Source of the DNA: Lepidodermella squamata | Taxonomy: Eukaryota; Animalia; Gastrotricha | Length of the DNA stretch: 64,000 bases | Assembly: GCA_047495785.1 (NCBI GenBank) | Contig: JBLDXI010000054.1 | Coordinates: 2,108,001 to 2,172,000, forward strand | Direction of reading: 5' to 3' | In this document: positions 3,530 to 62,826 of the stretch, one piece after another | Layout of the letters: each line of letters opens with the position of its first letter | Position numbering within the stretch: the stretch's first letter is position 1 | Notes under the pieces: generated by a model | Told to the model about the DNA's origin: nothing | Seen by the model: only the letters and a program-made list of their open reading frames with translations | Database searches by the model: none | Position numbers and translations under genes: made by a program

Positions 3530-3804
3530 TGTAACATATGTATATATTAGTGAGCATATTAGTGTTTCGCGCCGCTTGGTTGCGCGCCCGCCTCGGAGTG
3601 GCGCGCACGCTATAATTGCGCCTGTTCGCTATTGGTGCGCTCTATAATTGTACAGCGTTATGATTGGTTAGAACCGTTCTAGAAACTTCTATACTCTTGT
3701 TCTAGTATATTCGATTCCCGCCATATACTCGTATATAAAGTCACAGATTTATCGGAATAAATAAGATTGAAGTTTGCTCACTCGTCTTGTGTTCAACTCT
3801 TACA
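3530..3804 (+). repeat. 5' LTR
   Basis: TGTAAC...TTACA. Contains a TATA-like TATATAAA (about 3732) and AATAAA (about 3756). Confidence 0.95.
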
Positions 3805-3807
3805 TTT

Positions 3808-3823
3808 TGGTGGCCACTGCCCC
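3808..3823 (+). promoter_or_regulatory. Primer-binding site (complementary to a tRNA 3' end, possibly tRNA-Ile type ...GGCCA-CCA)
   Basis: TGGTGGCCACTGCCCG lies 3 nt downstream of the 5' LTR. The tRNA identity is an inference. Confidence 0.65.
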
Positions 3824-3853
3824 GAATCTCGCCTTCGTTCTTTTGTCGCTAGT

Positions 3854-4885: not shown

Positions 4886-4896
4886 GCTGGTCGGCC
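4852..4896 (+). promoter_or_regulatory. Programmed -1 ribosomal frameshift signal (gag to pol)
   Basis: In-phase slippery heptamer C CCA AAC (4852-4858), 7-nt spacer, then an 11-bp stem GGCCGGCCAGC/GCTGGTCGGCC with a 9-nt loop. The -1 frame is open from here into the protease LVDTGA. Confidence 0.8.
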
Positions 4897-7800: not shown

Positions 7801-8289
7801 AACCTCGACGAAGCCCGGCTACGTCAAAAGCGCTACTACGACCGCTACGCCAGCACTCGTCAGTTCGAGAAGGGCGATCTTGTTTGGATAACCGCTCCGA
7901 CTCGCACGGCCAAGCTGCTTCCGGTGTTTCTCGGACCGTACCGCGTTGAAGACCGCCTCGCCAACAACGTCAACTACCGACTTCGAAAGCTGCCCGCCGA
8001 ACAGAACGCGAACACCATCGTCGTCAACGTCGACCGTCTCAAACCGTGTGGCCAGTTCGAGGACTGGATGTCTCGACCAACTACGCTGCCGCCTGCGCCA
8101 GCGCCCGCCAACGCACCGTCTCGCGTCATGACTCGTGCCTCGAAGCAACCGCAACGTTACGGCTACGTCGACACCGATTTCGCTCTGCGCGGCCTGGTTC
8201 GAAGCGTTGACTCACCCGTCTCGTTCGACTACGATTTCATCGCCTTAACGCTTATCTGTTTTGTGTTAACGCTTCTTTCGAGTTTCTGA
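4858..8289 (+). pseudogene. pol: Gypsy Pol (protease, RT, RNase H, integrase) with one in-frame TAG at 6559-6561
   Basis: Protease LVDTGA; RT LDLKSGYWQI, FGLCNAP, VFLDD; RNase H DAS, EKEALA, V*LSDHKPL; integrase HHCC, DVV...SDQG...AER and GPY. ORFs 4969-6561 and 6607-8289 are in the same frame. Confidence 0.93.
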
Positions 8290-19432: not shown

Positions 19433-19882
19433 ATGGATCCAACGGTGAGTGGCACATAGTTTTGAGAAATTCATCACTACATTTATTTGTTGCTTATTCA
19501 GATTCTTCGACAGGGCCGGCGTCCAGCCTTGTGCAGGCGCGATTCTCGTTTACTAGAGCTGGCTCATCACCAAATTGTTGCCTTGACCAAGGAATGCAAG
19601 CTAGAAAGGTTGGAAAAGGGAGACTTGGAATTCAACATCAAGTTTATGAAGGAATCAAGCCTTGAAGAGAGGAGAAGAAATTCGGAAGAAATTCAAGCTG
19701 TAATAAAATGCATGACCGACTGGGGAACGAAAGAGCTTGCTAGGACGAGAGAGTTTTACGAAAAACAAATGATTCAGCTAATCAGCAACACAAATAAGGA
19801 GTTGAACGAGGCGAAGGTGGAGATTGACAAGCTAAAAGCGGAGATCGAACGACTGAGTTCGTCAGCAAACCCATCAACCTGA
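19433..19882 (+). CDS. Small coiled-coil protein, tandem copy 1
   Basis: Exon 1 ATG GAT CCA ACG (19433-19444), intron GTGAGT...TTCAG (19445-19501), exon 2 19502-19882. Heptad-rich, with AATAAA at about 19976. Confidence 0.7.
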
Positions 19883-20178: not shown

Positions 20179-20617
20179 ATGGATCCAACGGTGAGTGGCA
20201 CATAGTTTTGAGAAATTCATCACTACAGTTATTTTATTGCTTATTCAGATTCTGCGACAGGGCCGGCGTCCAGCCTTGTGCAGGCGCGATTCTCGTTTAC
20301 TAGAGCTGGCTCATCACCAAATTGTTGCCTTGACCCGGGAATGCGAGCGAGAAAGGATGGAAAAGGGAGACTTGGAATCAATCATCAAGTTTTTGGAGGA
20401 ATCACACCGTGACGAGATTAGAAGAATGACGGAAGACTTGCAAGCTGTAATGGAATGCATGACCGACTTGAGAACGAAAGCGGTTGCTAGGACGAGAGAG
20501 TTTTACAAACAACAAATTAGTATCAAAGACAAGGAGTTGAACGAGGCTAAGGTGGAGATTGGCAAGCTAAAATCAGAGATCGAACAAATGATTTCGTCCG
20601 AACAACCACTAGAATAA
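20179..20617 (+). CDS. Small coiled-coil protein, tandem copy 2
   Basis: Same structure (exon 1 20179-20190, exon 2 20249-20617). The 5' half is nearly identical to copy 1. Confidence 0.7.
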
Positions 20618-42306: not shown

Positions 42307-43145
42307 TAACGACGTTTATATTCTGGTATTACTAAATGTCTAAAAATGCTGAGAATGGAATACAGAATAAAATAGAAATAGTCTGAGGCGATTTCAGACT
42401 CTCTTCGACCTTCGGAATTACCATAGTTCGATTTTTGATGACTTTGTAGGAATTTTAAATAATTTTTGAAATTAACCACATCGAGGGAATTTTTCATTAT
42501 TTATCCGCGAAACAGACTTTGGGAACGAATCTGGGATGGGCAATATCGTGAAATCGGTTGTAGTCGGTCGCGATATTCTGCGATCGTTGAATGTCGCCGA
42601 TGTCATAGTACTCCGGCAGCCGGAACCATTGTCAACAAAATAGTTGAAGAACATGCTGCCTAGCATGCGCGTCATCTAATGCCAGCAATGCGTGCGCCCG
42701 TTTATTTTAGGGGACTATGAAAAAATTACGCGGGAGATTGGGAAGTGCCGGCGTTTTGCCGGCGAGCTTTCGAGGGCTGAATGATGACTTTACTTCGCCA
42801 AATCGTCATTGTGTGGCATATATACTATATACATATATTGTGAGCGTTTAATGGTCTCTCGCAAAAAATGATCTCAACTGCTGGCGTGAATTTGTACATT
42901 TCATGTTTATTACATTGGATTAATCTGTAAAAAAACCGAGAATAAAATCACACCATTGTCAGCGGTTTGTTTATATTCATTGTTTCAAGGTGACTCCAGA
43001 GAGCACCACGGGGTTAACCGATAATCAGATTTCGATAATCGATATCGATTGATTATCGATTTTTAGAAACGCCTAATCAGAAAAATTATCTAAATTCATC
43101 CAAATTTATTAGGGTTAGGACTTCGTGAACAAAAGGGAGAAAGAT

Positions 43146-44688
43146 TCATTGTTCATCATTTTTTGACAGTTTTTTCTTGTTCCTTCGACGGCTGAACGAC
43201 GCCCTGAGACGCCTGATACCAACGTTCATAACTGAGGACAGATTTTCGTAGTCTGACTGGCTTGGCCAAGGCTTACGTCGAAACAGCTCTTGCATTTGTT
43301 GAAGTTGAGAACGCGTGAACAATTTTCTCGCTCCTTTCGATCCGATCTTTCCTAAGGGTATGCCTCTCAGGATGTGTCTTACCTTAGCCGGATTCAGGTT
43401 TGTAACCGATGCTATGTGTTCAATCCGTTTGGCGTAGAGCCTGCAGGGAATTGCAGCTTCTTTTTCGAGGATTGCAATTTGCCAGGGCTCTAATGCCCAT
43501 TCACGGCGCTCTCCACCGCCAGTGTTCATTTTACGCACCTACGAATGATTATTTCAGATAATGTAAATGGTATAGATTCAACAAATTACATATGGTGTAT
43601 ATTATGGCTTATGCTTACGTTTTCGAGAGTCACTTTCTCGCACAGGCGAGTTTTCGTTTGACATCTTCTCCTTTGAAACCAATTTGCTACCAAGGACCTT
43701 TCCAGCTGAAGAGCTTTAGCTAGCTCATCTTTACGCGGCGTTGTAGGCGCTACATTCACAGCGAATTCCTAATTGATAAACAATCCAATTTTAGAGATTG
43801 AACAATGAATAAGACATTCACTTTTTCGAGAATTTTAATCTGCTCTTCGTTTAGAGTTACTTTCTTCCTTCGGCAAGCACGGTCTCGAAATCGCCTTCGA
43901 CTTACACTAAACCAATTTCTGATGTGTTTTACTGACAAGCCTGTCTTCAGGGCCAGATTTTCCACTTCTACCTTTTCCGGGTGAGAGTTGGCAAGATAAG
44001 CGCCCCGCAATATGTCGATCTGCTCCCCATTCATCCAACGCTTCTTGCGCTGAATTATTTTCGGGTCCCGATTCCTGAGAAGCCAACGATAAACTTTCTC
44101 TCGATTTGCGGACATTTCTCTGGCCACGGAGTAACTGAGTTTTCCTAGCGGAATATCCCTAGTTTTCCTCCACGCTTCCAAGTGGCGGTGCAATTCTTCA
44201 ATTTGCCAGCTTTCGAATTTACTATTTGTTCGTGTTGTCACGGTGAAAGAAGTTCGGCGTTGCTGCTCTCGGTATATTGCGCGCCCTTTAGAGCCTAATG
44301 TTCCGCGTTTACGAATAAACCACTTGCGAACTTTCAACTCCTGTAATCCGGTGACAGCTGCCAGTTCCGCAATATCTTTCACTTCAGGATAGGCGTTGGT
44401 TACGAATGCGTTGGCAAGTATTGCCTGTTGCACTCTAGATTTAATGTGCTTTCGAGGTTTAGCCATTACAACCGCCATGTCGGTGTAGCGATGATGGTAG
44501 ACCCATCGATAGACACGCTCCTTATCCTCTCCGATTTCTTCAGCTAAACGTTCGCTTATTACGGAGGGTTTCTCGTTACCATTTATCTGCCAATCTTCAA
44601 GCCTCTTTCGCATTATTGCAAGCTGCCAAGGCTCAAATCCAAGCCGTAGGCCATACTTCTTCCGCAGTCCTTCCTTGCCAACAGTCAT
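43146..44688 (-). CDS. Multi-homeodomain protein, copy 1 (469 aa, 7 homeodomain-like repeats)
   Basis: Exons 44688-43822, 43768-43619 and 43538-43146 (all phase 0). Repeats include NAYP..ELAAVTGL..KVRKWF, HP..LALKTGL..IRNWF and ELAKALQL..VANWFQRRR. Confidence 0.85.
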
Positions 44689-45487
44689 TTCTTATAATAA
44701 AAAATAAAACCTGGGGAAACCTAGGTCAATAAACAATGCTGTTATACGACATCTCACAAAACGCGACAGAACGAATTGTTTCAACTTGTGAAATAATTTT
44801 TGTCCATTTTTCATCCATTTTGAAGACGAAGTAGCTTTGGCTGTTAATTATATCGGCATCTAGCGTTAGCTTGCTCGTGCGGTGAAAGCCCATTAACTCG
44901 ATGCGCACTTCATACTTAAAGGCAACTTCGGCTTCGGCAAAACGGTTCAACCAAATTACTTAGTCATCAAATTCTTCTAGAGGAATGAATGCTTTATTTT
45001 TGCCCTTATTTAAGGGACCTCCTTTTACCAGAGCCAAGTAGCGGAGCCAGATTCGCATCTTAGCGGAACCAAATTATGAAATTTTCTGGTGGCCTGAAAT
45101 ATCTTTTTGGGTATTTCTTGGTTGCCAAGATTCGCCGCTAAAAAAATTCAACATTAAATTCAGCGTAACATTCTCTTTATAAGACAGAGGATCCAATTCA
45201 GAACTCTTCGCCTCAAATTAGGCTTGCGCAAATTGTTGTGCAAAACACGGCCATGCGGAAGTTTCGGATACATGAGGCGGTTGCAAGCTTCACGAGGCGC
45301 AGATCTAGCGGCGCTGACGGACTCAAATGTAGACACTCCTGAGAGATTTTCTTGGCAAGGCACTGCGTTGAAGCCAAATTGGCATAGCAAGCCGAAAAAA
45401 TCACAAATGTTTTTAACTAGAAAATATATCCATATAAATTAGATGATTAAAATGTACTTTGCGAATGAAAGGGACGAAGACTAATTT

Positions 45488-45868
45488 TCAATCATTGTTT
45501 GAATCTTTTCTGGTCCTCCGATTGCAAAACCGCTTTCTAAGACGCCCGATGCCAACATTCACAACTGAGGAAAGATTTTCGTAATCTGACCGGGATGGCC
45601 AACGCGTATGCCGAAACAGTTCTTCCATTTTTTCAAGTTGAGAAAACATGAGAAAACGCGGCGCTCTTGAACCAATATTTCTTGAGGACTTTCCTCGCAG
45701 GAAGCTACCTACTTTCGCCGGAGTCAGGTTTGTAACCGATGCCAAGTGTTCAATCCGTTTGGCGTAGAGCCTGCACGGAATTGCAGCTTCTTTTTCGAGG
45801 ATATCAACTTGCCAAGGCTCTAATGCCGAGAAACGGCGACCTCTTTCCCCGGCGTTCAATTTACGCAT
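45488..45868 (-). pseudogene. Isolated last exon of a multi-homeodomain copy
   Basis: Nearly identical to 52378-52758. Upstream exons are absent and replaced by unrelated sequence at about 45875-46913. Confidence 0.7.
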
Positions 45869-46913
45869 CTACGCCGATTTTCGTATCCTTTCATCCTTTT
45901 CATCTTTTCATCATTTCCAACTTGGAACTTATACAACAATAAGCCGCGGTCAACAAGTGCAAGTCTTTAGTTAGACGGAGAGCCAGAGTAATTTTAAAAA
46001 GTGGAAACAGGAGAAAAGCTGCTTAGGTTTGATGCGCGGGTGGGAGAGCTATCCGGTCCGATTAAACCGAAATTTTGAATACCTCTTATAAAATACAAAT
46101 AAATTAGACAATAAGTACTTATTGGATAAAAACGATTTGTGGAGAACTTTTCTCAATTAGAAAAGCGTGTAGGCCCTCTCGCAGCCATCATCGCAGACTA
46201 ATACAAGCAAAACAAGAAAAATTAGGCACAAAATGATTAATTGAAGGTTGAAATTAGGTTGAATTCAGGTAGAGTCATTGCCCCATTGACGGCTGAGAAT
46301 TTTCGAAAGAGATGGGCATCTAAGAAAGCGATTGTTTGCTAAAATTACATTCTAAAAGTCTATATAATACTTATTAGCCTAGACTGAGGAAAATTGAGCC
46401 GCCCAAGTTCTGAAAGCATCAAATTCGTGCCAACGTGCATGGGCTTTCACCTAAATCATCACGAATAAAACTCATAAGTCGAAAAAATGCAAGTCAGCTA
46501 ATCTCTCGTCGAGGTCCGATATTATTTGAATTTTTGAAAAACCGGACCTCGCCGAGGAAATGGTCGACGGCATCCCGGGTTACTACCCGGATTTATCGCG
46601 CGCGTTGTTAAGCGAAATCCCCACTTAGTGGGGAGAGTCACTGGTTACAGCCGCATCCCGGTTCATGTTCCAGGTTTTCCCTGTTCGACTAAATTTGAAT
46701 GATAAGGCCAAGCCGGGCCGGAGACCGGCTCACGCTAGTATCGGTTCTCGGGCTAGGCTTTCCAATATTGTATCGGGTTTGCACTGGCTTTTGGATTGGT
46801 TTGCCGTTGCGAGACCCGCTACTTCTGGCGTAACGATTCGAGGACTAGGTTTTCTAACATTGTCCCGGGCTTCGCTCGGCTTTCGTAAAAACGAAAACCA
46901 TGTAAAGTTTTAA

Positions 46914-47110
46914 GAGTGTATTCCTCGCAGGAAGTGTATTACTTTCGCCGGAGACAGGCTTGTAACCGATGCTTCTGTTTAGAGGATCGCAATTTGCCAA
47001 GGCTCTAATGCCAAGAAACGGCGACCTATGTCACCGGCGTTCAATTTACGCATCTAAGAACGCTAAATTGAGAAGTTACATGGGTTACGACTGAGCCTTA
47101 CGTTTTCGAG
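46914..47110 (-). pseudogene. Deleted fragment of the multi-homeodomain exon 2 end, intron and exon 3 start
   Basis: Matches the exon-3 start (ttacgcatct...caaggctctaatgcc) with internal deletions. Confidence 0.65.
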
Positions 47111-47308
47111 AAATGACCGTCCGAACGCCGAGAAATCGCAAGGGTAGTTGGTTCGGAATTCGGAATTCGGTCGCTTGGTAGGGCTCTGCGTTGAAGCGAG
47201 AGCAATATAGCAAGCCGAAAGCGTAGAAGTTTTAGCTAAGAAATATGTATAGGTATCTAAATTTATTATGACTAAGAAATGTTCATCATGAACAGAAGGA
47301 AGAGAGAT

Positions 47309-48827
47309 TCACTGTCCATCATTTTTTGTCGTTTTTTTCCTGTTCCTTCGATTGATAAACCACTCCATGAGACGCCTGATACCGATATTCACAACTGATG
47401 AAAGATTTTCGTAATCTGACTGGGTTGGGAAAGGTTCACGTCGAAACAGCTCTTGCATTCGTTCAAGTTGAAAACGTGTAAAAAAATTTTTGTTCGCTCC
47501 TTTTGATCCGATCTTCCCTGAGGATATGCCTCTCAGAACGCTCCTTACTTTAGTGGGAGTGAGTTTTGTCAGCGATGCCAAATGAACTAGCCGTTTTGCA
47601 TAGCGCCTGCACGGAATAGCAGCTTCTTTTTCGAGAATCGCAATCTGCCAGGGCTCTAATGCCCAATTACGGCGCTCTCCGTCAACGGCATTCAATTCAC
47701 GCATCTGCGAATGATAAATTCAGAAAGAAAATGGTAATAGATGACTTGAGCTTACATTATCAGCAGTCACTTTGCCGCAAAGGCGAGTATTCGTTTGAGT
47801 TCTTTTCTTTTGAAACCAATATGCTATCGTGGATTTTTTGAGCTGAAGAGCTTTTGCCAGTTCATCTTTACGCAGCCTCGTGGGCGCTACATTCAAGGCG
47901 AATTCCTAATTGATAAACAATCAAATTTCTAAAATTGAACAACTAAAATAAGACATTCACTTTTTCGAGGAGTTCAATCTGCTGTTCGTTAAAAATTACT
48001 TTCGCCCCTCGGCATGCATGGTCCCGAAATCGCCATCGACTTCCAGTAAACCACTTTTGGATGCTCTTTACTTTCAAATCTGTCTTCAGGGCAAGTGCTT
48101 CCACTTCCCCCTTTCCCGGATAACGATTGGCTAGAAAAGCCCTCCTCAATATGCCGAACTGATCCTCATTCATCGGGCGCTTCTTGTGTTCGATTATTTT
48201 CGGGTTTCGATTCTTGAGAAGCCATCGATAAACTTTTTCTCGATTTGCGGACATTTCTCTGGCCAAGGAGAAACTAAGTTTACTCAGCGGAATATTCTGA
48301 GTTTTCTTCCATGCTGCTAATTGGCGCTGCAATTCTTCAATTTGCCAGTTTTCAAATTTCACATTTGCTGGAATTGCATCTGCAACTGAATTTCGGCGCC
48401 GCTGATCTTTGAATCTTGCGCGCCCTTCAGAGCCTAATGTTCTGCGTCTACGACTACAAAACCACTGACGAACCTTCAACTCCTGTAATCCGGTGACAGC
48501 TGCCAGTTCCTTAATATCTTTCACTTCAGGATAGGCGTTGGTTTCGAATGCGTTGGTAAGTATTTCGTGTTGCGCTCTAGATTTGTTATTTGGCGATTTA
48601 GCCCTTACAACCGCCATGTCGGTGTCGCGACGGCGTTTGACCCAACGATAGACACGCCCCGTATCCTCCCCGATTTCTTCAGCTAAACGTTTGCTCATCA
48701 TGCAGTAGTCCTCGTTACGGTTTTTCTGCCAATCTTCTAGTCTCTTATGCATCACTTCAAGCTGCCAATGCTCAAATCCAAGCCGTGGGCTAATCTTCTT
48801 CCGTAGTTTTTCTTTTCCAGCACTCAT
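47309..48827 (-). CDS. Multi-homeodomain protein, copy 2 (intact)
   Basis: Exons 48827-47961, 47905-47756 and 47704-47309, with the same intron positions as copy 1. Confidence 0.85.
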
Positions 48828-49881
48828 TTGCTAAAATGGAATCATAAGCTAGAAACCTAGAACAGTAAAAAGAATGCAATTTCCCGAAACCTCACCACAC
48901 TCGAAGCAATGAATGACCTGACACTCATGCCGTTGTCATACTGCCAAAAATTTTCGAATTTTCAGTTAAAAATTCCTCCTTTCAGCTCAGCCGGGCCAGA
49001 CAACAAAATGAGAATTTATCCCACTGTTTCGTTTATTTTGAAAGGTTTTGGAGCCTGCTTTAGCGGAAATTCTTCAACATTTTCTCGCTTCGCTCGGTTT
49101 TTAGTTGTAATTCAGCAAAGAAATGTTTTCCATCCCTGGCAGCTCCGGAATCCAAGATCACACCCTTGCTCACGCTCTATTCAATCCATTTTGAAGCTGT
49201 ATCCTAAAAATTTCCTAAAAAAATTGAAGGCTTTAAAAACTTTGAGAGCATGCAACGCGATTTGCCCCACCTCAGATTCCAGAGTGGTACTAATGGGAAT
49301 GATGCAGAATTTCATGAGAGTAAGACTTTCCTATGGTAAGCTTTAACGCTGCGTTGAAATTTCTGGCTTCACTGGAGCAAGGGTCCTCCTTTACCAGAAC
49401 CAAGTCGCGGAACCTTTCCAGTGGCCTGAAATCAATTCTTGGGTATCTCTCATGTGTCAAGATTGCCCGCAAAAAATCACCATGATTAAATTGAGCGTAA
49501 CATTCTCTTTAAAAATTGTCGACCTTTTTCGAACGCTTGCTGTTCCTTAGCCACGATGTTCCCGGGCTCATGTTTTGACCATCATCAGTCCGAACCCATG
49601 TGTAAGCTAACAAACCAGCTCATTCCCTATACCGTTACCGAGCCATCGCTTTTCGAAGGTAAAAGAGGAAAACATGAAAACCTCTCGACGGTGCCCTAAA
49701 TCTGCATAAAAGCCCCACTTTTGAACCTATACTGTGTAGGAAACCTTACCCTACTAGCACAAAAGTTGAAAACAACGAAGCCGAAAACAACGAATTTCAC
49801 AAAATAATGAGCCTAGAAAATATATACATTGAAATGATTCAATTTAATTAGCGAATGAAAGGAAGTAAGATTCATTGTAAT

Positions 49882-51274
49882 TTATTGTTTGATGCTTTCA
49901 AGTTGAGAAGGCATGAAAAAATGTTTCGCTCCTTTTGATCCGATCTTTCCTAAGGGTATGCCTCTCAGGATGTGTCTTACCTTAGCCGGATTCAGGTTTG
50001 TAACCGATGCTATGTGTTCAATCCGTTTGGCGTAGAGCCTGCACGGAATCGCAGCTTCTTTCTCGAGGATCGCAATTTGCCAAGGCTCTAATGCCAAAAA
50101 ACGGCGACTTTTTTCACCGACGTTCAATTTACGCATCTAAGAACGTATCAAATCGCATCAAATCAAGAACTAACATGGGATACGATTGAAGCTTACGTTT
50201 TCAAGAGTCACTTTGTCGCACAAGCGAATATTCGATTTATCTCTTCTCCTTTGAAACCAACCTGCTAGCACGGACCTTTTGAGCTGAAGCGCTTTAGCAA
50301 GCTCATCTCTACGCTGCACTGTAGGCGATACATTCACAGCAAATTCCTAATGGACAAATCCTTCAATTACAAATAATGGACAGCGATGAGTCATTCACTT
50401 TATCGAGAAGTTCAATCTGCTCTTCTTTCAAATTGATTTTATTCCTTCGACTTGGATGGTCTCGAAATCGGCATCGCATCCAGCAGAACCACATTTTGAT
50501 GCGTTTTATTGCCAAACCTGTCTTAAGGGCCAGACCTTCCACTTCCGCCTTCCCCGGGGAAGAATTGGCTAGAAAAACGCCCCGCAGTACGTCGAACTGC
50601 TCCTTAGTCATCGGACGCTTCTTGTGCGCCACCATTTTCGGGTCCCGATTTCTGACAAGCCAACGATAAACTTTCCGTCGATTTGCAGACAGTTCTCTGG
50701 CCACTGAGTAACTGAATTTCCACAGCGAAATGTCCTGAGTTTCCCTCCAGGCTTCCAAGTGGCGCTGCAATTCTTCAAGGTGCCAGCCTTCGAATCTCGA
50801 ATTCGCTGGAGTTGTCTCTGCAAATGAATGTCGGCGTTGTTCATCTTGATACATTGCGCGCCCTTCGGAGCCTATTGTTTCGTGTCTACGACGAGTAAAC
50901 CACTTGCGAACCTTCAACTCCTGTAATCCGGTGACAGCTGCCAGTTCCTTAATATCTTTCACTCCAGGATAGGCGTTGGCTTTGAATGCGTTGGCAAGTA
51001 TTTCCCGTTGCGTTCTAGATTTGTAATTTTGTGATTTAGCTCCAACAGCCGCCATGCCAGTGTGGCAACGGCAGTAGACCCAACGATAGACACGTTCCTT
51101 ATCCTCTCCGATTTCTTCAGCTAAACGTTTGCTCATTATGCAGAGTTTCTCATCGAACTGGTTATTCTGCCAATCTTCTAGCCTCTTCTGCATCACTTCG
51201 AGCTGCCAAGGCTCAAATCCAAACCGTATCGAAGGGCTACTCTTTTTCCGCAGTCCAGCCTTACCAACACTCAT
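49882..51274 (-). CDS. Multi-homeodomain protein, copy 3 (7th homeodomain lost by deletion)
   Basis: Exons 51274-50399, 50346-50197 and 50136-49882. Exon 3 stops at MPSQLESIKQ. Confidence 0.75.
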
Positions 51275-51639
51275 TTGTTAAAATGGAAACCTATTAGATC
51301 AGTAAAAATGCAATTTTATGACATCTGACCACACTTGAAGCATTGAATTGTTTCAACTTTTGATATAAGGTTCGTCCTTTTCTGACTTTTTTTTAATTTT
51401 TTATGTTAATTTTATCGACATCTTGCATATCCAGCTTTTACCAAGAATAAGCCGCTCGTGCGGTGAAAGCCAGCTCACTTGAAGCGCATTTCAAACCTGA
51501 GGGAAATTTTGGTATCGGCCTTAACAGTTCAACCAAAATACTTCGAGCCATCAAATTCTTCTAGAGGAATGAATGTTTTTTTTTTGCCCATATTTTAACG
51601 TCCTTCTTTTACCAGACCCAAAAAGCGGACCCAAATTGT

Positions 51640-51795
51640 GGAGTTCTCTGGCCACTGAGTAACTGAATTTCCACAGCGAAATGTCCTGAGTTTCCCTCCA
51701 GGCCTCCAAGTGGCGCTGCAATTCTTCAAGGTGCCAGCCTTCGAATCTCGAATTCGCTGGAGCCTATTGTTTCGCGTCTACGACGAATAAACCAA
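51640..51795 (-). pseudogene. Short duplicate of copy-3 exon 1 (about 50691-50900) with an internal deletion
   Basis: Near-identical gagttctctggccactgagt...aattcgctgga followed by gcctattgtttcg. Confidence 0.7.
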
Positions 51796-52377
51796 TTGAT
51801 GGAGTTCTGACAAGTTCGGTTGAAAATCGAGGTCGGTGTGGTCGTTTCTTGAGGCTGCATCAAATGTTAGGCTGCTGTAAAATCCGTATGCAGTCGATGA
51901 TAGGCCATGGATCTAGCGACTAATACTCCTACGGCCGGGAGGCGAGAGTAGGTTTCGGATACATGGGGCGGTTGCGACCTTCACGAGGCGCTGATCTAGC
52001 TGAGGGACAGTAATGTCGACACTCCTCAGAGATTATCTCGGCATGGCATTGTGCAGAAGCCGAAGAGGCATAGCAAGCCAAAACCCCGAAAGATTTCAGA
52101 AATGTAATGACTACAAAATATAGAATTGTCGCCAAAAATATAGGTCGAGTCGCTATGACAATTCGATATTTTACGGTATAACATTCGTAAATCGTTCATA
52201 TCTGAACTCGCCGCACTCGATTTACTCGTCGCAACTCGCCTCCGGCTCGTCACGACTCGTAAATCTCGGGCGGCTCCGTACAGATATAAACGTTTTACTC
52301 ATGTCATACCATACAAATATATACATATAAATTGAATGATTAAAATGTACTTCAATGAAAGGGAGGGAGACTAATTT

Positions 52378-53825
52378 TCAATCATTGTTTGAATCTTTTC
52401 TGGTCCTCCGATGGCAAAACCACCTGCCGAGACGCTTGGTGCCAACATTCACAACTGCGGAAAGATTTTTGTAATCTGACCGGGATGGCCAACGCGTACG
52501 TTGAAACAGCTCTTCCATTTTTTCGAGTTGGGAAGGCATGAGAAAACGCGGCGCTCTTGGTCCGGTCTTTCTTGAGGACTTTCCTCGCAGGAAGCTACCT
52601 ACTTTCGCCGGAGTCAGGTTTGTAACCGATGCCAAGTGTTCAATCCGTTTGGCGTAGAGCCTGCACGGAATTGCAGCTTCTTTTTCGAGGATATCAACTT
52701 GCCAAGGCTCTAATGCCGAGAAACGGCGACCTCTGTCCCCGACGTTCAATTTACGCATCTAAGAACACTAAATCAAGAAATTAGTGATACGATTGAGGCT
52801 TACCTTTTCGAGAGTCGCTTTGTCGCACAAGCGAATATTCGATTTATTTCTTCTGCTTTGAAACCAACGTGCTATCGCGGACCTTTTGAGCTGAAGCGCT
52901 TTAGCAAGCTCATCTCTACGCTGCACTGTAGGCGATACATTCACAGCAAATTCCTAATTATGATGCATACTTCAAATTACAAATATTGAACAACGAACAC
53001 GACATTCACCTTTTCGAGAATTTTAACCTGCTCTTCGTTTAGAGTTACTTTCCGATGAACTTGATAGTCTCGAAATTGCTGTCGACTTCCGCAAAACCAT
53101 TTTGTGATGTACCGTACTGGCAGACCTGTCTTTAGGGCCAGCTCTTCCTCTCCCGCCTTTCCCGGGTAAGGATTGGCTAGAAAAGCGCTCCTCAATGTGT
53201 GAAACTGTTCCTCATTTGCCTTACACTTCTTGGGCATGATCGGGTCCCGATGCCTGAGAAGCCAACGATGAACTTTCCCTCGATTCGCGGATATTTTTTT
53301 AGCAACGGACATGCTAAGTTTGCATAGCTTAATATCCTGCGTTTTCGACCATTCTTCCAAGTGGCGTCGCAATTCATCAATCTGCCAACTTTTGAATTTC
53401 CCCTCTTGGTAAATCGCGAACCCTTCAGAGCGTAAGATTCCGCGTCTTCGAGAACAAAACCACTGACGAACCTTCAACTCCTGTAATCTGGTGACAGCTG
53501 CCAGTTCCTTGATATCTCTCACGTCAGGATATGCTTTCGCTTCGAATGCGTTGACAAGTATTTCCTGTTGCTTTCTAGATATGTAATTTCGAGATTTAGT
53601 CTTTGCAACCGCCATGTCAGTGTCGCGACGCCGGTTGAGCCACAAATAGACACGCTCCACCGTCTCTTCGATTTCCTCAGCTAAACGTTTGCTCATGAAG
53701 TAGAGCCCCTCGTTACGGTTTTTCTGCCAATCTTCTAACCTCTTCTGAATCACTTCAAGCTGCCAAGGCTCAAATCCACACCGCGGGCTTTTCTTCTTCC
53801 GCGATTTTTCCTTGCCAACACTCAT
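52378..53825 (-). CDS. Multi-homeodomain protein, copy 4 (intact, shorter linker)
   Basis: Exons 53825-53010, 52953-52804 and 52758-52378. Confidence 0.85.
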
Positions 53826-54126
53826 TTATTTAATCTAGTCAAGAATGCAATTTAACGACATTCGACACAACATTCGAAGCAATGAATTGATTTCACTTGA
53901 TTATTTTAGATATAACGTTCATCCACTTCTGAATTTAAAAGACAACGAAATTTTATTTAGGTATTGTTTTATCCGCATCTAGCATTCAGCTAATCGAGAA
54001 TACACCGCTCGTGCCTTGGGGCTCGTGCGGTGTCTGCCTGCACACTCGATGCGCACTTCAAACATAAAAACATGAAAATCTTTATTATTCCCACATACGC
54101 ATGGTTAAATTTTGCCATGGAGAAAC

Positions 54127-56034: not shown

Positions 56035-57832
56035 TTCCCTTATTGTCCTCTTTCCAAATAAAATACACAAAATAACTCTCTAATAATACTATGGAACAAG
56101 AGGCGCGTGCTAGTAAGATGTATCCATGCTCATCATATTGATGGGGCACGTAAGAGACGGAGAGGGAGATGGCGAGGGTTTTATCAGTGGCAGGGTACTT
56201 TTCGATAGCAGAGAGAAACACATTACAGAGAATTGCGGTAAGAGTAAAAAGGAGAAAATATGGCGGAGACAACGGTAGCTAACGGAGGAATTTTATAAAA
56301 AAGCAAGGCAGCCTGTAGAGGAAAGAAAAACAACATGAAAGAAGAGGTGAAGAAAGAAGAGGGAAGATATAGGAGAGAAGATGGGAGAAAAGAGAATAAC
56401 AGCCCAGCCTATGAAGTCGGGCAGAGGACCACGAGGGAGTCTGTTGCTCAACAGCACGAAGGGCGAGCGCGGAGGGGGGCGGGCCATCATGCGGACGCTC
56501 TCGAGGTCCTCGCGCAGCGGCAGGACAAACTGAGCGGCTTTGGCGACATAACGGCGCTGGCACTGTTCCAGAAACCGAGGGACACTCGGGATGCGGCAAC
56601 GAGATTCCAACTCCGACACGCGGACCCTGTCGTCCCGACGAATGTGTGGAGCATTGCACGCAGGCTATCATTTTGGATGACTGCGAGACGATTAAGCTGT
56701 TGCTTCGAGGCGGTAGCCAGACAAATGGTCCCATAAGACCAGCACGAACGGACCAGAGTCAAGTAAAGGGTGCGGCGCCAGCGGCGCGACAGCCCAGGGG
56801 TGAACATGAGATGTTTGAAAAAAACCAGATTTCTGCGGCAACGGTCAGAGACCTTGTCCACATGAACTTTCCACGTCAGTTTAGGGTCCAAGTGAACACC
56901 GAGAACTCGTAACGACTCGACTTGCGGAATTACGGCTCCGTTGAGCCTAACATCAACGGACGCGTTACCAAAGGGCATAACTTCGCTCTTCGCGGGATTA
57001 AACTTCTGGCGCCATTTCTTGGCCCAGTCGGAAATACGAGTGAGCTCCAATTGGAGGCGACGCTGAGCAGCAGGGAACGTGCCACCCTCGCCGACGACAG
57101 TTAGATCGTCCGCGTAGGCCTGCAGCAACGTGCCATCCACGCTTGGGGCGGACAGCAAATCGGCGGTGTACAGAATGTAGAGAAGCGGCGACAACGGGGA
57201 ACCCTGCGGCACCCCGCAATGGACGACGACTTGACGACTCAGCGAGCCCGCCACGCGAGCTTGCAGACGACGGTCGCGAAGATAGTCGGCCAACCAGCCG
57301 ACCAAATTTCGCGGGAGAGGCAGCTTGGCCAGCCGGCGTGCCACACGGAATCGTAGGCCGCCTGAACATCCAGGCCTGCCACAACAGTCTTCTTGCGCAG
57401 GGAGCGGTTGACGTGGACGCGATGAACGATGCGAAGTGGGACATCTGGCGCGGAATGGTGCGGACGGAAGGCAAACTGATTTCTCAGGGAGAAGGTGTTG
57501 ACTTTCAAGAAACTGGGTCATCCACCGAGCCACGATCGAGCTTGGCGTCAGTCGGCAGCAAGGAGATGGGACGCTGTGACGAGACATGGTTCTGCGGCTT
57601 GCCGGCCGTCGGGATAGGCACCACAACCGCTTCTTTCCACGCTTTAGGCACGTAACGACTCCCAAGAGACATGTTGAATAGCCGACGAAGGTGGGTTTGC
57701 AGGACAGGGCCACCCCACTTCAGGTAGATGTTTTGAATACCATCCAAGCCAGGGGCCTTGAAGGACTTCAAACGGCTAACAGCATCAGCGAGCATCCGTT
57801 GACCGACAGAAAACTCGCCGAGAGCGGGCACG
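56035..57832 (-). mobile_element. 5'-truncated, frameshifted Jockey/I-like LINE (RT to 3' UTR)
   Basis: KAPGLDGI, QRPISLLP, AYDSVWHAG, GVPQGSPLSPLLY, QAYADD and KFNPAKS spread over several frames, followed by a pyrimidine-rich 3' UTR. Confidence 0.9.
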
Positions 57833-58911
57833 CGGATCACATCGGAAGCACGAAGGTAGAGAATTTCGATTTCGGAGTTCAACCCAAATACCACGAGCCA
57901 TCGAATTCTTCGAGATGCTTTAGTTCTGCCTATAATTGAGGGTCCTCCTTTTACCAGAACCAAGTAGCGGAACCCGATTTGTCAGCGGAAACACATTTTG
58001 GAATTTGCGAGTGGCGAGTGGTCTGAAATACTTATAAGCTTTCGGGTATTTCTTGGATGTCAAGATTGAACGCAATAGTTATAAAAAATCACCATTAATT
58101 CAGGGTAACATTCTCTATAAGACAGAGTATACAAGTCAGAACTCATACATCGCCTCGTGTTAGTAGAATTATTCAATAAGTGACTCTCGGCATGTTTCGA
58201 CTATGGTTCCGCTACAGCAAGTTAGGTTCCGCTCGCTATCAATTTGGTTCCGCTAAAAAGATATTCGAATTGTTTGGATAAAAATTTTAAATAGATAAAT
58301 AAACGCCCACCATAAATTGTTGTTTGGGTGTTTCTGTTCCTTAGACAGAGTATACAGTATACAAGTCAGAACCCATACATTTCATGGAATAAATCAAGCA
58401 AGTTTCAAAAACACAAACAAGCAAGTTTCTCGAATTTTGGTTTCATAAATAAAATACTATTTTTTGTTTTCTAGGACAAAGGGAAATCTGCCCGCCGACT
58501 CCGCACCGCATCTGTCTCCCGCCAAAGCATCGCCGCCGCTGTCGCCGCCGTCAATCACGTTGACTCGTCTATCGCTGTCGACGACAACCTGCGGTCGTTG
58601 AATGTCGCCGATGTCATAGTCCTCCACCAGCCGGAGCCTTTGCCAACAAAATATCTGAAGAAACATGCCCCCTAGCATGCGCAAAATCAAATGCCCGAAT
58701 TTAATTTGTGCATTTCAGGTTCATCGTATTAGATTAATCTGTAAAATAGAGAATAAAATCACACCATTGTCAGCGGTTTGTTTATTATTTCCCGTTTCAA
58801 GGTGATTCCAGAGAGCACCACAGGTTCAATCGTTCAGCTACCCGAAACAACAATTAGGCTACTGCAAAGGATTGGCTAGAAAAGTGCTCCTCAGTATGTC
58901 AAACTGATCCT

Positions 58912-60268
58912 TTTCGCTCCGCCATGCTGCAGCCCGACTCGGCCTCACGATCTTGCCCTCGCCGAAACCCACTCGCCTTCACCTCGACACTGGCACCTTG
59001 TCAACCCTCGATGTTTGGGTCCTTAACGACGCCGCAATGCGCCTGCTGCGCGGCGGTGTGATTGTTGGCGATAGGTACACCAGCGATCATTATACGACCT
59101 CTATATCTGTCGATTTTCCAGTTGGCAGACGCCCACCTGCATTTGACCATCCCGCTCCTGACCCGTTCCCGCGCTTCGATGTCTCCCGCGCTGACCGTCT
59201 CGGATTTTCGCGTACGCTGATCGAGAAGTTGATTGCGATTCCTATGCCTGTTCCCGGTGACCCGTTCCCGCGTCTTGTCGAGTATCGCCGCTCCGTCACC
59301 CGCGCTGTAGCCGACTCCCGTGACCGTCACCTACCCGTCTGCGAGCCAGGGCAGCTGCGGAGGCTTGATATTATGAGCCAGGAGATGCGTCAGATCATCA
59401 AGGAGAAGCGCATTCTGGAGAGAGCCCTGGGCGACCATGTCGACCGCGACCTGTGCGTTCTTCTCAAGGCCCTTGACGCCCGTTTTCGTGATGCGAAGCA
59501 AGCCCATCAACTCCGCCGAGATGTCGCCAACCTTCGAATGGCAGAAGCTCTGTCAGCTCAACGCCGCTACCGCGAAGCCTGGGAGCGACTCAACCGTCTC
59601 GACAAGCGCCGCCCGCAGCGCTCGACTGGTCCTATGAAGCTTGATGATGGTCGCGTCCTCGAGCCGTCCGTCGAGCTCGCTGATGTCCTTCTCGATCAGT
59701 TTGTGAAGCCCATGACGCCATTCACCGACCCTGCTGCCGACGCCTATCTGAAGCAACAGTGGGCTGACATCGAACAGTTCGTCGCCTCTGATCCCGACCT
59801 ACAGCGCACTGACCGCCTTCAGCTACCAGCCCCGGGCGAGTTCTCCGTCAGTCAGCGCATGGTTGCCGATGCTGTGTCACGCCTCAAGCCGTTCAAGGCT
59901 CCCGGGTTGGATGGTATCAGCCCCGTCTTCAACAAGTGGGGTGGACCGGTGCTGCAGCGCCACCTCTGGCACATGTTCAGCCTGAGCCTCGGATCGCGCT
60001 TCGTACTGCCCGACTGGAAGGAAGCGGCTGTGATACCCGTGCCGAAAGCTGGCAAGCCGTTAGGAGCTGTCTCATCCCAGCGGCCGATCTCGTTGTTACC
60101 CGTCGACGGCAAGCTGTTGGAGTCCGTCGTGGCGCGTTGGTTGGGCGAGTTCTTGGAGAGCCACCACGCCCTGCCCGACAACCAGTATGCGTTCCGCGCG
60201 CACCACTCTGCACCCGATGTCCCTTTACGCGTCGCCCACACCGTTCACCTTGCCCGTTCTCGACACCG
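58912..60268 (+). mobile_element. Internal fragment of a related Jockey/I-like LINE (end of APE endonuclease to start of RT)
   Basis: PTR...STLD...SDHY (APE C-terminal motifs), KAPGLDGI, WKEAAVIPVPK, QRPISLLP and NQYAFR. Truncated at both ends. Confidence 0.88.
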
Positions 60269-61734
60269 AAAACATGAGACGTACCAGGACGTGGCGCTTC
60301 GATTTAAACGCCTGATTTTTGTGTTATTTCTTAATAAGGTCCAAAGGTCGTTGTGGCTAAAAATAACCTCATTCAGCGCGGGAGACATCGAAGCGCGGGA
60401 ACGGGTCAGGAGCGGGATGGTCAAATGCAGGTGGGCGTCTGCCAACTGGAAAATCGACAGATATAGAGGTCGTATAATGATCGCTGGTGTACCTATCGCC
60501 AACAATCACACCGCCGCGCAGCAGGCGCATTGCGGCGTCGTTAAGGACCCAAACATCGAGGGTTGACAAGGTGCCAGTGTCGAGGTGAAGGCGAGTGGGT
60601 TTCGGCGAGGGCAAGATCGTGAGGCCGAGTCGGGCTGCAGCATGGCGGAGCGAAAAGGATCAGTTTGACATACTGAGGAGCACTTTTCTAGCCAATCCTT
60701 TGCAGTAGCCTAATTGTTGTTTCGGGTAGCTGAACGATTGAACCTGTGGTGCTCTCTGGAATCACCTTGAAACGGGAAATAATAAACAAACCGCTGACAA
60801 TGGTGTGATTTTATTCTCTATTTTACAGATTAATCTAATACGATGAACCTGAAATGCACAAATTAAATTCGGGCATTTGATTTTGCGCATGCTAGGGGGC
60901 ATGTTTCTTCAGATATTTTGTTGGCAAAGGCTCCGGCTGGTGGAGGACTATGACATCGGCGACATTCAACGACCGCAGGTTGTCGTCGACAGCGATAGAC
61001 GAGTCAACGTGATTGACGGCGGCGACAGCGGCGGCGATGCTTTGGCGGGAGACAGATGCGGTGCGGAGTCGGCGGGCAGATTTCCCTTTGTCCTAGAAAA
61101 CAAAAAATAGTATTTTATTTATGAAACCAAAATTCGAGAAACTTGCTTGTTTGTGTTTTTGAAACTTGCTTGATTTATTCCATGAAATGTATGGGTTCTG
61201 ACTTGTATACTGTATACTCTGTCTAAGGAACAGAAACACCCAAACAACAATTTATGGTGGGCGTTTATTTATCTATTTAAAATTTTTATCCAAACAATTC
61301 GAATATCTTTTTAGCGGAACCAAATTGATAGCGAGCGGAACCTAACTTGCTGTAGCGGAACCATAGTCGAAACATGCCGAGAGTCACTTATTGAATAATT
61401 CTACTAACACGAGGCGATGTATGAGTTCTGACTTGTATACTCTGTCTTATAGAGAATGTTACCCTGAATTAATGGTGATTTTTTATAACTATTGCGTTCA
61501 ATCTTGACATCCAAGAAATACCCGAAAGCTTATAAGTATTTCAGACCACTCGCCACTCGCAAATTCCAAAATGTGTTTCCGCTGACAAATCGGGTTCCGC
61601 TACTTGGTTCTGGTAAAAGGAGGACCCTCAATTATAGGCAGAACTAAAGCATCTCGAAGAATTCGATGGCTCGTGGTATTTGGGTTGAACTCCGAAATCG
61701 AAATTCTCTACCTTCGTGCTTCCGATGTGATCCG

Positions 61735-62730
61735 CGTGCCCGCTCTCGGCGAGTTTTCTGTCGGTCAACGGATGCTCGCTGATGCTGTTAGCCGTTTGAA
61801 GTCCTTCAAGGCCCCTGGCTTGGATGGTATTCAAAACATCTACCTGAAGTGGGGTGGCCCTGTCCTGCAAACCCACCTTCGTCGGCTATTCAACATGTCT
61901 CTTGGGAGTCGTTACGTGCCTAAAGCGTGGAAAGAAGCGGTTGTGGTGCCTATCCCGACGGCCGGCAAGCCGCAGAACCATGTCTCGTCACAGCGTCCCA
62001 TCTCCTTGCTGCCGACTGACGCCAAGCTCGATCGTGGCTCGGTGGATGACCCAGTTTCTTGAAAGTCAACACCTTCTCCCTGAGAAATCAGTTTGCCTTC
62101 CGTCCGCACCATTCCGCGCCAGATGTCCCACTTCGCATCGTTCATCGCGTCCACGTCAACCGCTCCCTGCGCAAGAAGACTGTTGTGGCAGGCCTGGATG
62201 TTCAGGCGGCCTACGATTCCGTGTGGCACGCCGGCTGGCCAAGCTGCCTCTCCCGCGAAATTTGGTCGGCTGGTTGGCCGACTATCTTCGCGACCGTCGT
62301 CTGCAAGCTCGCGTGGCGGGCTCGCTGAGTCGTCAAGTCGTCGTCCATTGCGGGGTGCCGCAGGGTTCCCCGTTGTCGCCGCTTCTCTACATTCTGTACA
62401 CCGCCGATTTGCTGTCCGCCCCAAGCGTGGATGGCACGTTGCTGCAGGCCTACGCGGACGATCTAACTGTCGTCGGCGAGGGTGGCACGTTCCCTGCTGC
62501 TCAGCGTCGCCTCCAATTGGAGCTCACTCGTATTTCCGACTGGGCCAAGAAATGGCGCCAGAAGTTTAATCCCGCGAAGAGCGAAGTTATGCCCTTTGGT
62601 AACGCGTCCGTTGATGTTAGGCTCAACGGAGCCGTAATTCCGCAAGTCGAGTCGTTACGAGTTCTCGGTGTTCACTTGGACCCTAAACTGACGTGGAAAG
62701 TTCATGTGGACAAGGTCTCTGACCGTTGCC
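61735..62730 (+). mobile_element. Inverted duplicate of the LINE RT segment at 56837-57832
   Basis: Part of the right arm of the inverted duplication. Translated ORFs are identical. Confidence 0.9.
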
Positions 62731-62826
62731 CAATTATAATTGTTGGATAAAGAATAAGTCATTTACGTTTTCGAGAAGTTCAAGCTGCTCTTTTTTCAAA
62801 TTGATTTTATTCCTTCGACTTGGATT
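62731..62826 (-). pseudogene. Remnant of a multi-homeodomain exon-1 end
   Basis: ttcgagaagttcaagctgctcttttttcaaattgattttattccttcgacttgga matches copy 3 at about 50400-50457. Confidence 0.65.

What the first reader, a model, noticed from the sequence alone, without database searches (positions are those of the whole stretch)
43146..53825. Fast-evolving tandem array of seven-homeodomain genes
Seen: four three-exon copies (three intact, one lacking the last domain) plus at least four fragments (45488, 46914, 51640, 62731, and a small piece near 58865). Each full protein carries about seven homeodomain-like repeats. Repeats 1 and 3 are atypical (FExWQ..L..W, extended helix1-helix2 region, VYRW instead of WF). 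Repeats 2, 4, 5 and 7 are closer to canonical (YP/HP..LA..TGL..V..WF), and repeat 6 is degenerate. Recognition-helix residues differ between copies (repeat 2: WFIRKR, WFCSRR, WFTRRR), and the normally invariant Asn51 is mostly lost. Inference: a lineage-specific transcription-factor family diversifying its DNA specificity by birth and death, analogous to Rhox/Obox/Dux clusters or KRAB-ZF arrays, and possibly germline, early-embryo or anti-transposon in role.
Basis: partly seen in the sequence, partly recalled or inferred. Interest (0 to 1): 0.75.

Follow-up and report, generated by a model that had tools for sequence, protein, structure and literature searches.

The report
Fast-evolving seven-homeodomain gene array
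A small invertebrate genome (probably the gastrotrich Lepidodermella squamata) carries a tandem array of genes whose proteins are seven homeodomain-type modules in a row. The copies differ faster than neutral drift at exactly the residues that normally read DNA bases, as fast-evolving zinc-finger families do, but expression and DNA binding are untested.

Summary
On the minus strand at 43146-53825 lie four three-exon genes. Three are intact (469, 470 and 448 aa); one is cut short after repeat 6 (426 aa). There are also an orphan last exon, three further gene pieces and a mirrored 42-nt scrap. All introns are GT-AG, phase 0, 45-80 nt, at the same places in every copy.

Pfam passes four homeodomains per protein (repeats 2, 4, 5, 7). 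Repeat 6 is a diverged homeodomain (16 bits; hhalign 93% to the canonical repeats). Repeats 1 and 3 are one atypical type, probably homeodomain-derived, with a 4-residue insertion.

The array continues past the window: ten copies in about 42 kb, about half broken. A wider family sits in other clusters of this genome. No orthologue turned up among 1.84 billion protein representatives.

Scaffold residues are strongly conserved (omega 0.17). The a-priori base-contact positions 47/50/51/54 give omega 1.9-3.3 (LRT P = 8e-16; window copies alone P = 4e-8), and this is not a CpG effect.

The scan already reported the adjoining half of this array (s1-402016) with the same conclusion. I class it as a new variant of a known kind.

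The parts
43146..44688 (-). Copy c1, intact three-exon gene (exons 44688-43822, 43768-43619, 43538-43146 including the stop; 469 aa; introns 53 and 80 nt)
   Evidence: AATAAA 35 nt after the stop
45488..45868 (-). Orphan last exon (repeats 6-7): intact 126-aa ORF with no exon 1 or 2 upstream; 87% identical in protein to c4's exon 3
   Evidence: direct repeat D11 is 91% identical in DNA to 52354-52653
46919..47053 (-). Fragment of exon 3 (first about 60 residues, repeat 6)
   Evidence: tblastn 52-58% identity, E 2e-15
47309..48827 (-). Copy c2, intact (exons 48827-47961, 47905-47756, 47704-47309; 470 aa). It is the only window copy with Asn51, in repeat 7 (WFINRR)
49882..51274 (-). Copy c3 (exons 51274-50399, 50346-50197, 50136-49882; 426 aa). 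It stops after residue 84 of exon 3 and lacks repeat 7; a poly(A) signal lies 33 nt after the stop
51641..51763 (-). Fragment of exon 1 (repeat 3 region), 97.6% identical to c3 residues 155-195: a recent partial duplicate
52378..53825 (-). Copy c4, intact (exons 53825-53010, 52953-52804, 52758-52378; 448 aa). It has a 14-residue deletion in the linker before repeat 3
62770..62826 (-). Remnant of the end of an exon 1 (residues 273-291). It is cut off at 62730 by the arm of an inverted repeat that carries reverse transcriptase
   Evidence: (E 2.7e-4)
58868..58909 (-). 42-nt piece matching exon 1 residues 220-233 (13 of 14 identical), inside the inverted-repeat arm; its mirror copy is at 60658-60699 (+)
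   Evidence: (E 0.001)

Best explanation
This is the proximal half of a lineage-specific tandem array of protein-coding genes. Each gene has three exons and encodes a protein of about 470 aa that is almost nothing but seven homeodomain-type three-helix modules, in the order A-C-A-C-C-A'-C.
- C (R2, R4, R5, R7) are canonical 60-residue homeodomains.
- A (R1, R3) are an atypical type with a longer helix 1 and VYRW in place of WF.
- A' (R6) is a conserved, non-basic derivative.

Shown here: the array grows and decays by tandem duplication, exchange between copies, truncation and retroelement insertion. Selection keeps the homeodomain scaffold (L16, F20, W48, F49, R53) but drives amino-acid replacement at the major-groove positions 47, 50, 51 and 54, and also 55 and 4, of five modules.

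Inferred: the proteins are multi-module nucleic-acid readers, most likely of DNA. With Asn51 replaced they would not read the usual TAAT core. Each paralogue would read a different composite site, so the array works like a homeodomain counterpart of polydactyl zinc-finger families. R3 and R6, which are conserved and not hypervariable, more likely serve as structural or partner-binding modules.

Unknown: the targets and the tissue or stage. A race with repeats or transposons, or a germline or early-embryo regulatory role, are the two most plausible settings.
For: - Gene structure: conserved GT-AG phase-0 introns in all copies. Exons are 80-84% identical in DNA, against 50-56% for the flanks. 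Poly(A) signals lie 33-49 nt after the stop in 5 of 7 copies. An acceptor-like motif is conserved before the ATG.
- Domains: four homeodomains pass Pfam and R6 scores 16.2 bits. R6 against the pooled canonical repeats gives hhalign 93%, E 3e-7. R1 and R3 match each other at 98%.
- R1/R3 as homeodomains: their profile's two best hits in the whole PDB are the Aristaless homeodomain, aligned end to end in register (E 0.03 and 0.1). AlphaFold gives three helices for each of R1-R4 (pLDDT about 80-86 in the domains). R2 and R4 superpose on homeodomains at Z 9.5, rmsd 0.7-2 A. The language-model neighbours of R1 and R6 are homeodomain-only proteins (leads only).
- Selection: overall omega is about 0.6. 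The specificity positions give omega 2.2 (bootstrap 1.6-3.0; 0 of 20,000 random sets), 1.9 by tree counting (P = 3.5e-8; window copies 1.67, P = 8e-4), 2.0 without CpG transitions (CpG o/e is 1.26), and 3.26 by maximum likelihood against 0.70 for the rest (LRT 64.8; window copies 3.22, LRT 30.4).
- Pattern along the domain: the per-position profile peaks at 47, 50, 54, 51, 55 and 4, while core positions are 0.14 or lower.
- Turnover: c3 is truncated. Outside the window, c5 has exon 1 only, c6 and c8 are frameshifted, and c6 and c9 lack an ATG. Each exon has a different nearest paralogue.
Against: - There are no RNA data of any kind. Neither protein search found a near-identical transcript-derived product, though this organism's own HSP70 is also absent from that collection, so this says little.
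- Asn51, the most conserved DNA-contacting residue of homeodomains, is replaced in nearly all modules. In other families that goes with loss of DNA binding (for example HOPX, from general knowledge).
- R1 and R3 fail Pfam, and their link to homeodomains is only borderline significant.
- The selection tests assume one tree although the copies are mosaics. Only 7 sequences were used, and the tree is poorly resolved (bootstraps 20-88%).
- The published L. squamata assembly, which this genome probably is, was built from whole-genome-amplified DNA, which can create chimeras (PMC11660948).
Confidence: 0.6

Rival explanations
1. The genes are real and under diversifying selection, but the hypervariable helix-3 face binds protein or RNA instead of DNA. 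The modules would be adaptor domains, like homeodomain-only proteins, engaged in a conflict with fast-changing protein or RNA partners.
For: Asn51 is lost in almost all modules. The nearest language-model clusters for R1 and R6 are 'homeodomain-only protein' (scores 0.76-0.81, leads only). No effector domain is present.
Against: The variable positions are exactly the major-groove set 47/50/51/54, plus arm position 4. Helix 3 stays strongly basic, with R52/R53/R55/R57 and basic N-terminal arms, as expected for nucleic-acid binding. RNA binding is not excluded by this.
Confidence: 0.2
2. The array is decaying: the copies are pseudogenes or nearly so, and the variation reflects relaxed constraint.
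For: Overall omega is high (about 0.6). About half of the ten array copies are broken. There are many fragments. There is no expression evidence.
Against: Three of the four window copies keep open frames across three exons, with intact splice sites. Scaffold omega is 0.17 (P = 4.5e-14 below neutral). Omega at the specificity sites is significantly above 1, not equal to 1. Exons are far better conserved than flanks.
Confidence: 0.07
3. The genes are divergent orthologues of a conserved multi-homeobox gene (ZHX/Homez, ZFHX, Dux or Compass) rather than a lineage-specific family.
For: The best solved-structure sequence matches are the DUX4 double homeodomain (E 1.7e-14) and ZHX2/3 homeodomains. 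Foldseek's top hits are DUX4.
Against: There are no zinc fingers or other class-defining domains. Identity to those homeodomains is only 20-30%, and hits are spread over the PRD, ZF, LIM and TALE classes. The best public protein, P0001, is 25% identical and lacks the R1/R3-type repeat.
Confidence: 0.05
4. The array is partly an assembly artefact of whole-genome amplification.
For: The published L. squamata assembly, which G000 probably is, was made from MDA-amplified DNA. A perfect 2,358-nt inverted repeat lies inside the array, a form that MDA chimeras often take (general knowledge).
Against: The gene copies differ by about 15-25% in DNA, so they cannot be amplification duplicates. Only the inverted repeat at 56.8-62.7 kb is suspect.
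Confidence: 0.03

Closest known systems
Dux (double homeobox) arrays of mammals
   Same: More than one homeodomain per protein; tandemly repeated, fast-evolving and lineage-specific. DUX4 is the best PDB match by sequence and by fold.
   Different: Dux has two PRD-class homeodomains with Asn51, against seven modules here. Only 20-30% identity, different exon structure, and no atypical R1/R3 module.
ZHX / Homez and ZFHX (ZF-class multi-homeobox proteins)
   Same: Three to five homeodomains in one protein, some of them degenerate and used for protein contacts. ZHX homeodomains are among the top PDB hits.
   Different: Those families have C2H2 zinc fingers and are conserved single-copy vertebrate or bilaterian genes. 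Here there are no zinc fingers, the genes form a tandem array, and evolution is fast.
Amphioxus Muxa/Muxb and the fast-evolving multi-homeodomain orphan genes of C. elegans
   Same: Orphan, lineage-restricted genes that encode many homeodomains. These are cited as the rare multi-homeobox cases (PMC6118893; PMC6956190).
   Different: I found no report for those genes of a tandem array with positive selection focused on base-contact residues.
KRAB zinc-finger (polydactyl) gene clusters
   Same: Tandem arrays evolving by birth and death; proteins made of many DNA-reading modules; replacement concentrated at the base-contacting residues while the scaffold is conserved.
   Different: A different fold (homeodomain versus C2H2) and no KRAB or other repressor domain. 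A link to transposons is not shown here beyond a retroelement inserted in the array.
Rhox, Obox, ETCHbox and Shx clusters
   Same: Lineage-specific tandem homeobox clusters with rapid evolution, duplication, loss and gene conversion (PMC8208926; PMC4207634, listed).
   Different: Those are single-homeodomain genes derived from known classes (PRD, Hox). Here there are seven modules of an orphan class.

Membership tests
Homeodomain (Pfam PF00046) | Profile score above the curated cut-off (22.9 bits) | tested here: met
   R2 35.0, R4 38.0, R5 34.3 (exon 2 part alone, profile positions 18-56) and R7 31.6 bits. R6 scores 16.2 bits, below the cut-off. R1 and R3 give no hit.
Homeodomain (Pfam PF00046) | Three-helix fold that superposes on solved homeodomains | tested here: met
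   R2 (79-134) and R4 (214-271) reach Z 9.3-9.7, rmsd 0.7-2 A. R1 and R3 are predicted as three helices but were not superposed on their own. The exon 3 model is too poor to use (pLDDT 61).
Homeodomain (Pfam PF00046) | Conserved scaffold L16, F20, W48, F49, R53 | tested here: met
   Nearly invariant in R2, R4, R5 and R7, with omega 0.14 or lower at these positions. R1 and R3 keep W48 and R53 but have V/L at 49. R6 lacks W48 and F49.
Homeodomain (Pfam PF00046) | Asn51, the near-universal adenine contact | tested here: not met
   Among the window copies it is present only in c2 R7. Elsewhere position 51 is R, K, S, G, V, W, H, C or deleted.
ZHX/Homez or ZFHX (ZF class) | C2H2 zinc fingers together with the homeodomains | tested here: not met
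   No zinc-finger family among the Pfam hits for any exon.
TALE class | Three-residue extension in the loop between helix 1 and helix 2 | tested here: not met
   The canonical repeats have standard spacing (F20...Y25-P26), although Homeobox_KN scores 26-28 bits. R1 and R3 have a 4-residue insertion (3+1) against Aristaless, which is not the TALE pattern.
Dux (PRD-class double homeobox) | Exactly two PRD-type homeodomains, with orthology to mammalian Dux | tested here: not met
   Seven modules; 20-30% identity to DUX4.
KRAB zinc-finger family | A KRAB domain plus a C2H2 array | tested here: not met
   Neither domain is found. The resemblance is in evolutionary behaviour only.
Amphioxus Mux / C. 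elegans multi-homeodomain orphans | Sequence relatedness to those genes | not tested
   No reference sequences were at hand. None of the ten top public hits whose names I looked up carries such a name.

The most novel reading that the evidence does not exclude
Gastrotrichs evolved a homeodomain-based counterpart of the KRAB zinc-finger system. Arrays of polydactyl seven- and eight-homeodomain proteins have Asn51-less recognition helices that are continually re-tuned, by positive selection at positions 47/50/51/54, to recognise changing genomic targets such as transposons or satellites.
Probability: 0.2. Interest if true: 0.85.

Novelty: new variant of a known kind. Interest (0 to 1): 0.6.

Why it matters
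Proteins with many homeodomains are rare, and homeodomain specificity residues are normally among the most conserved in animal genomes. Here a whole array of seven-module proteins shows positive selection on exactly those residues. This is a natural experiment in how homeodomain recognition can be re-tuned once Asn51 is gone. It would also be a second, independent case, after C2H2 zinc fingers, of a modular DNA-reading fold recruited into a fast birth-and-death family. The phylum has almost no molecular data, and the published genome paper looked only at Hox genes. Its weight is limited because expression, binding and targets are all untested, and because the scan already reported the neighbouring half of the same array.

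Tried and rejected
- The word-based protein search with exon 1 found nothing at E <= 0.001.
- The exhaustive profile search found only generic multi-homeodomain proteins. The best, P0001, is 25% identical, and none has the R1/R3-type repeat.
- A mitochondrial COX1 search of the genome, to identify the species, found nothing.
- The HSP70 search showed only that this is an animal with no close relative in the collection (best 83%).
- The exon 3 structure model was too poor to use (pLDDT 61).
- CpG hypermutability as the cause of the excess replacements is rejected: CpG o/e is 1.26 and omega is 2.0 without CpG transitions.
- A transposon-borne origin of the genes is rejected: I saw no transposase among the Pfam hits or terminal repeats around the gene units, and the spacing fits local tandem duplication.
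Full report
**What is there.** The window is G000:C54:2108001-2172000 of a 121.2-Mb, 151-contig animal genome. On the minus strand between 43146 and 53825, ORF listing and tblastn with the exons of the first copy show four gene copies of one structure. Reading the DNA of copy 1 and the junctions of all copies gives three exons:
- a long first exon (272-292 codons) that starts at ATG;
- a 50-codon second exon;
- a last exon of 126-131 codons.

The two introns are 45-80 nt. Both are phase 0 with GT-AG ends (donors GTGAAT and GTAAGC). They lie at the same positions in every copy, here and in the rest of the array.

Copies c1, c2 and c4 are open throughout (469, 470 and 448 aa). c3 stops after residue 84 of exon 3 and lacks the last module. 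In 5 of 7 copies examined an AATAAA or ATTAAA lies 33-49 nt after the stop. Exons are 80-84% identical in DNA between copies, introns 71-77% and flanks 50-56%. About 100 nt upstream of the ATG are conserved and include an acceptor-like ...TTTACTGATCTAG|GTTTC motif.

**Fragments.**
- an orphan but intact last exon at 45488-45868;
- an exon-3 piece at 46919-47053;
- an exon-1 piece at 51641-51763, 97.6% identical to c3;
- an exon-1-end remnant at 62770-62826, which abuts position 62730, the end of a perfect inverted repeat;
- a 42-nt scrap at 58868-58909 with its mirror at 60658-60699.

**Extent.** The array does not end with the window. Exon-1 matches continue to C54:2193394, giving ten exon-1-bearing copies in about 42 kb, plus one dispersed copy 148 kb upstream (53% identity). 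Outside the window c5 has only exon 1, c6 and c8 are frameshifted, and c6 and c9 have ATT and ATC in place of ATG. Weaker matches, and 44 matches to the atypical repeat alone, fall in further clusters on contigs C3, C24, C23, C31 and elsewhere on C54. So this family belongs to a larger set of multi-homeobox genes in this genome.

**Domains.** Pfam scored module by module on copy 1:

| Module | Pfam Homeodomain score (cut-off 22.9 bits) |
|---|---|
| R2 | 35.0 |
| R4 | 38.0 |
| R5 | 34.3 (from exon 2 alone; an intron between homeodomain positions 18 and 19 splits this module) |
| R7 | 31.6 |
| R6 | 16.2 (E 0.0095), below the cut-off |
| R1, R3 | no hit |

Profile-profile comparison groups R2, R4, R5 and R7 together (91-98%). 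It links R6 to the pooled canonical repeats (93%, E 3e-7, end to end in register). It shows that R1 and R3 are one type (98%, E 1e-14). Their link to R6 is weak and confined to helix 1 (R1 67%, R3 5%), and their direct link to canonical repeats is only borderline (E 0.003).

Further evidence on R1/R3:
- Against all PDB sequences, the R1/R3 profile's two best hits are the Aristaless homeodomain. The alignment runs from position 2 to 61 in register (F8, Q12-L13, L16, W48, R53) with a 3+1-residue insertion after helix 1 (E 0.03 and 0.1).
- AlphaFold on exon 1 (9 paralogues, mean pLDDT 72, about 80-86 within the domains) gives three helices for each of R1-R4, with a longer first helix in R1 and R3.
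- R2 and R4 superpose on solved homeodomains at Z 9.3-9.7.
- Language-model neighbours of R1 and R6 are homeodomain-only proteins, which is a lead only.

So four modules are certain homeodomains, R6 is a diverged one, and R1/R3 are probably homeodomain-derived. The order is A-C-A-C-C-A'-C. The proteins have no other domain.

**Relatives.** A word-based search with exon 1 found nothing. An exhaustive HMMER search of 1.84 billion representatives with the exon-1 profile found 1,734 proteins at E <= 0.001. The best is an unnamed 1,666-aa metagenomic protein with 13 matched stretches (273 bits), only 25% identical. Next come other unnamed metagenomic proteins, mammalian Dux-like models and Timema proteins. 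None contains the R1/R3-type repeat. By sequence the nearest solved homeodomains are DUX4, ZHX2/3, ISL1, HESX1, ZFHX3 and PBX1, which is no single class.

I did not search with the joined three-exon protein.

**Organism.** The genome's size and contig number fit the published Lepidodermella squamata assembly (122 Mb, 157 contigs, made from MDA-amplified DNA). That paper analysed only Hox genes (PMC11660948). Other agents' notes name the same species. I did not verify this by sequence: HSP70 shows only an animal without close relatives in the collection.

**Selection.** Seven copies with complete or nearly complete frames (c1-c4, c7, c9, c10) were aligned exon by exon. Pairwise dS is 0.24-0.47 and omega 0.41-0.79.

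I fixed the test class beforehand from established homeodomain-DNA structures: positions 47, 50, 51 and 54, in the five modules that keep a basic helix 3 (R1, R2, R4, R5, R7), which is 20 codons.

| Test | Omega at the 20 test codons | Support |
|---|---|---|
| Pooled pairwise (dN 0.72 vs dS 0.33) | 2.2 (bootstrap 1.6-3.0) | 0 of 20,000 random 20-codon sets reach this dN |
| Parsimony counting on the ML tree, 7 copies | 1.9 (90.7 replacements vs 47.8 expected) | P = 3.5e-8 |
| Same, four window copies only | 1.67 | P = 8e-4 |
| Excluding CpG transitions (window CpG o/e is 1.26) | 2.0 | P = 7e-9 |
| Partitioned codon model, my own GY94-type maximum likelihood, 7 copies | 3.26 vs 0.70 for the rest | LRT 64.8 against omega = 1, P = 8e-16 |
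| Same, window copies only | 3.22 | LRT 30.4, P = 4e-8 |

For comparison, scaffold positions 45/48/49/53 give omega 0.17 and the remaining codons 0.61.

The per-position profile over the canonical modules peaks at 47, 50, 54, 51, 55 and at arm position 4. Positions 12, 16, 19, 20, 26, 34, 35, 37, 40, 48, 49 and 53 are 0.14 or lower. R3 and R6 are not hypervariable at these positions.

Caveats:
- The copies are mosaics: each exon has a different nearest paralogue, and tree supports are 20-88%.
- Only seven sequences were used.
- Three of them are the copies that an earlier report (s1-402016) analysed, so only the four-copy result is independent of it.

**Reading.** The pattern is a conserved fold plus accelerated replacement on the major-groove face, in genes that are duplicated, exchanged, truncated and hit by a retroelement.

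That the surface reads DNA is an inference. The face is the canonical one and stays basic, but Asn51 is gone, so binding to RNA or protein remains possible. The role is open. I found no description of this family in the papers I could search. The multi-homeobox state is listed there as rare: Hdx, Compass, Zfhx, Zhx/Homez, Mux and Dux (PMC6118893), and fast-evolving multi-homeodomain orphans in C. elegans (PMC6956190).

I therefore class it as a new variant of a known kind (lineage-specific fast-evolving homeobox arrays). It behaves like zinc-finger arrays without being related to them.

Noticed in passing
window 56837-59194 and 60373-62730: A perfect (100%) 2,358-nt inverted repeat with a 1,178-nt spacer, carrying reverse-transcriptase ORFs (RVT_1), sits in the gap of the array. 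One arm ends exactly where a homeobox-gene remnant begins. Because the probable source assembly was made from MDA-amplified DNA, this could be an amplification chimera and not a real foldback.
   Followed up: partly
window 44700-44800, 48830-48930, 51280-51380, 53830-53930 (upstream of each ATG): A conserved motif of about 100 nt lies upstream of every copy and ends in ...TTTACTGATCTAG|GTTTC, some 10-35 nt before the ATG. It looks like an unpaired 3' splice site, either for a 5'-UTR intron or for a spliced leader. No RNA evidence was available.
   Followed up: partly
G000:C3:2355829-2381507; C24:1818396-1824779; C54:601111-635928; C54:408461-417636; C23:1350306-1358218; C31:134385-139882: Further clusters of genes carry the same atypical-plus-canonical homeodomain pair at 25-40% identity. 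The multi-homeobox superfamily in this genome is therefore much larger than this one array.
   Followed up: partly
window 3767-8289: Long open frames on the plus strand (372, 530 and 560 aa) look by eye like the gag, protease/reverse-transcriptase and integrase of an LTR retrotransposon. The region is GC-rich (57%) against 42% around it. No domain search was run on them.
   Followed up: no
window 19487-19882 and 20195-20617: Two neighbouring ORFs encode near-duplicate proteins (same N-terminal LLIQILRQGRRPALCRRDSRLLELAHHQIVALT... stretch): a local tandem duplication of unknown function.
   Followed up: no
window 42541-42672: A weak exon-3-like match (E 0.01, 41% over 44 residues) lies just beyond copy c1. 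It may be an older eroded remnant marking an earlier edge of the array.
   Followed up: no
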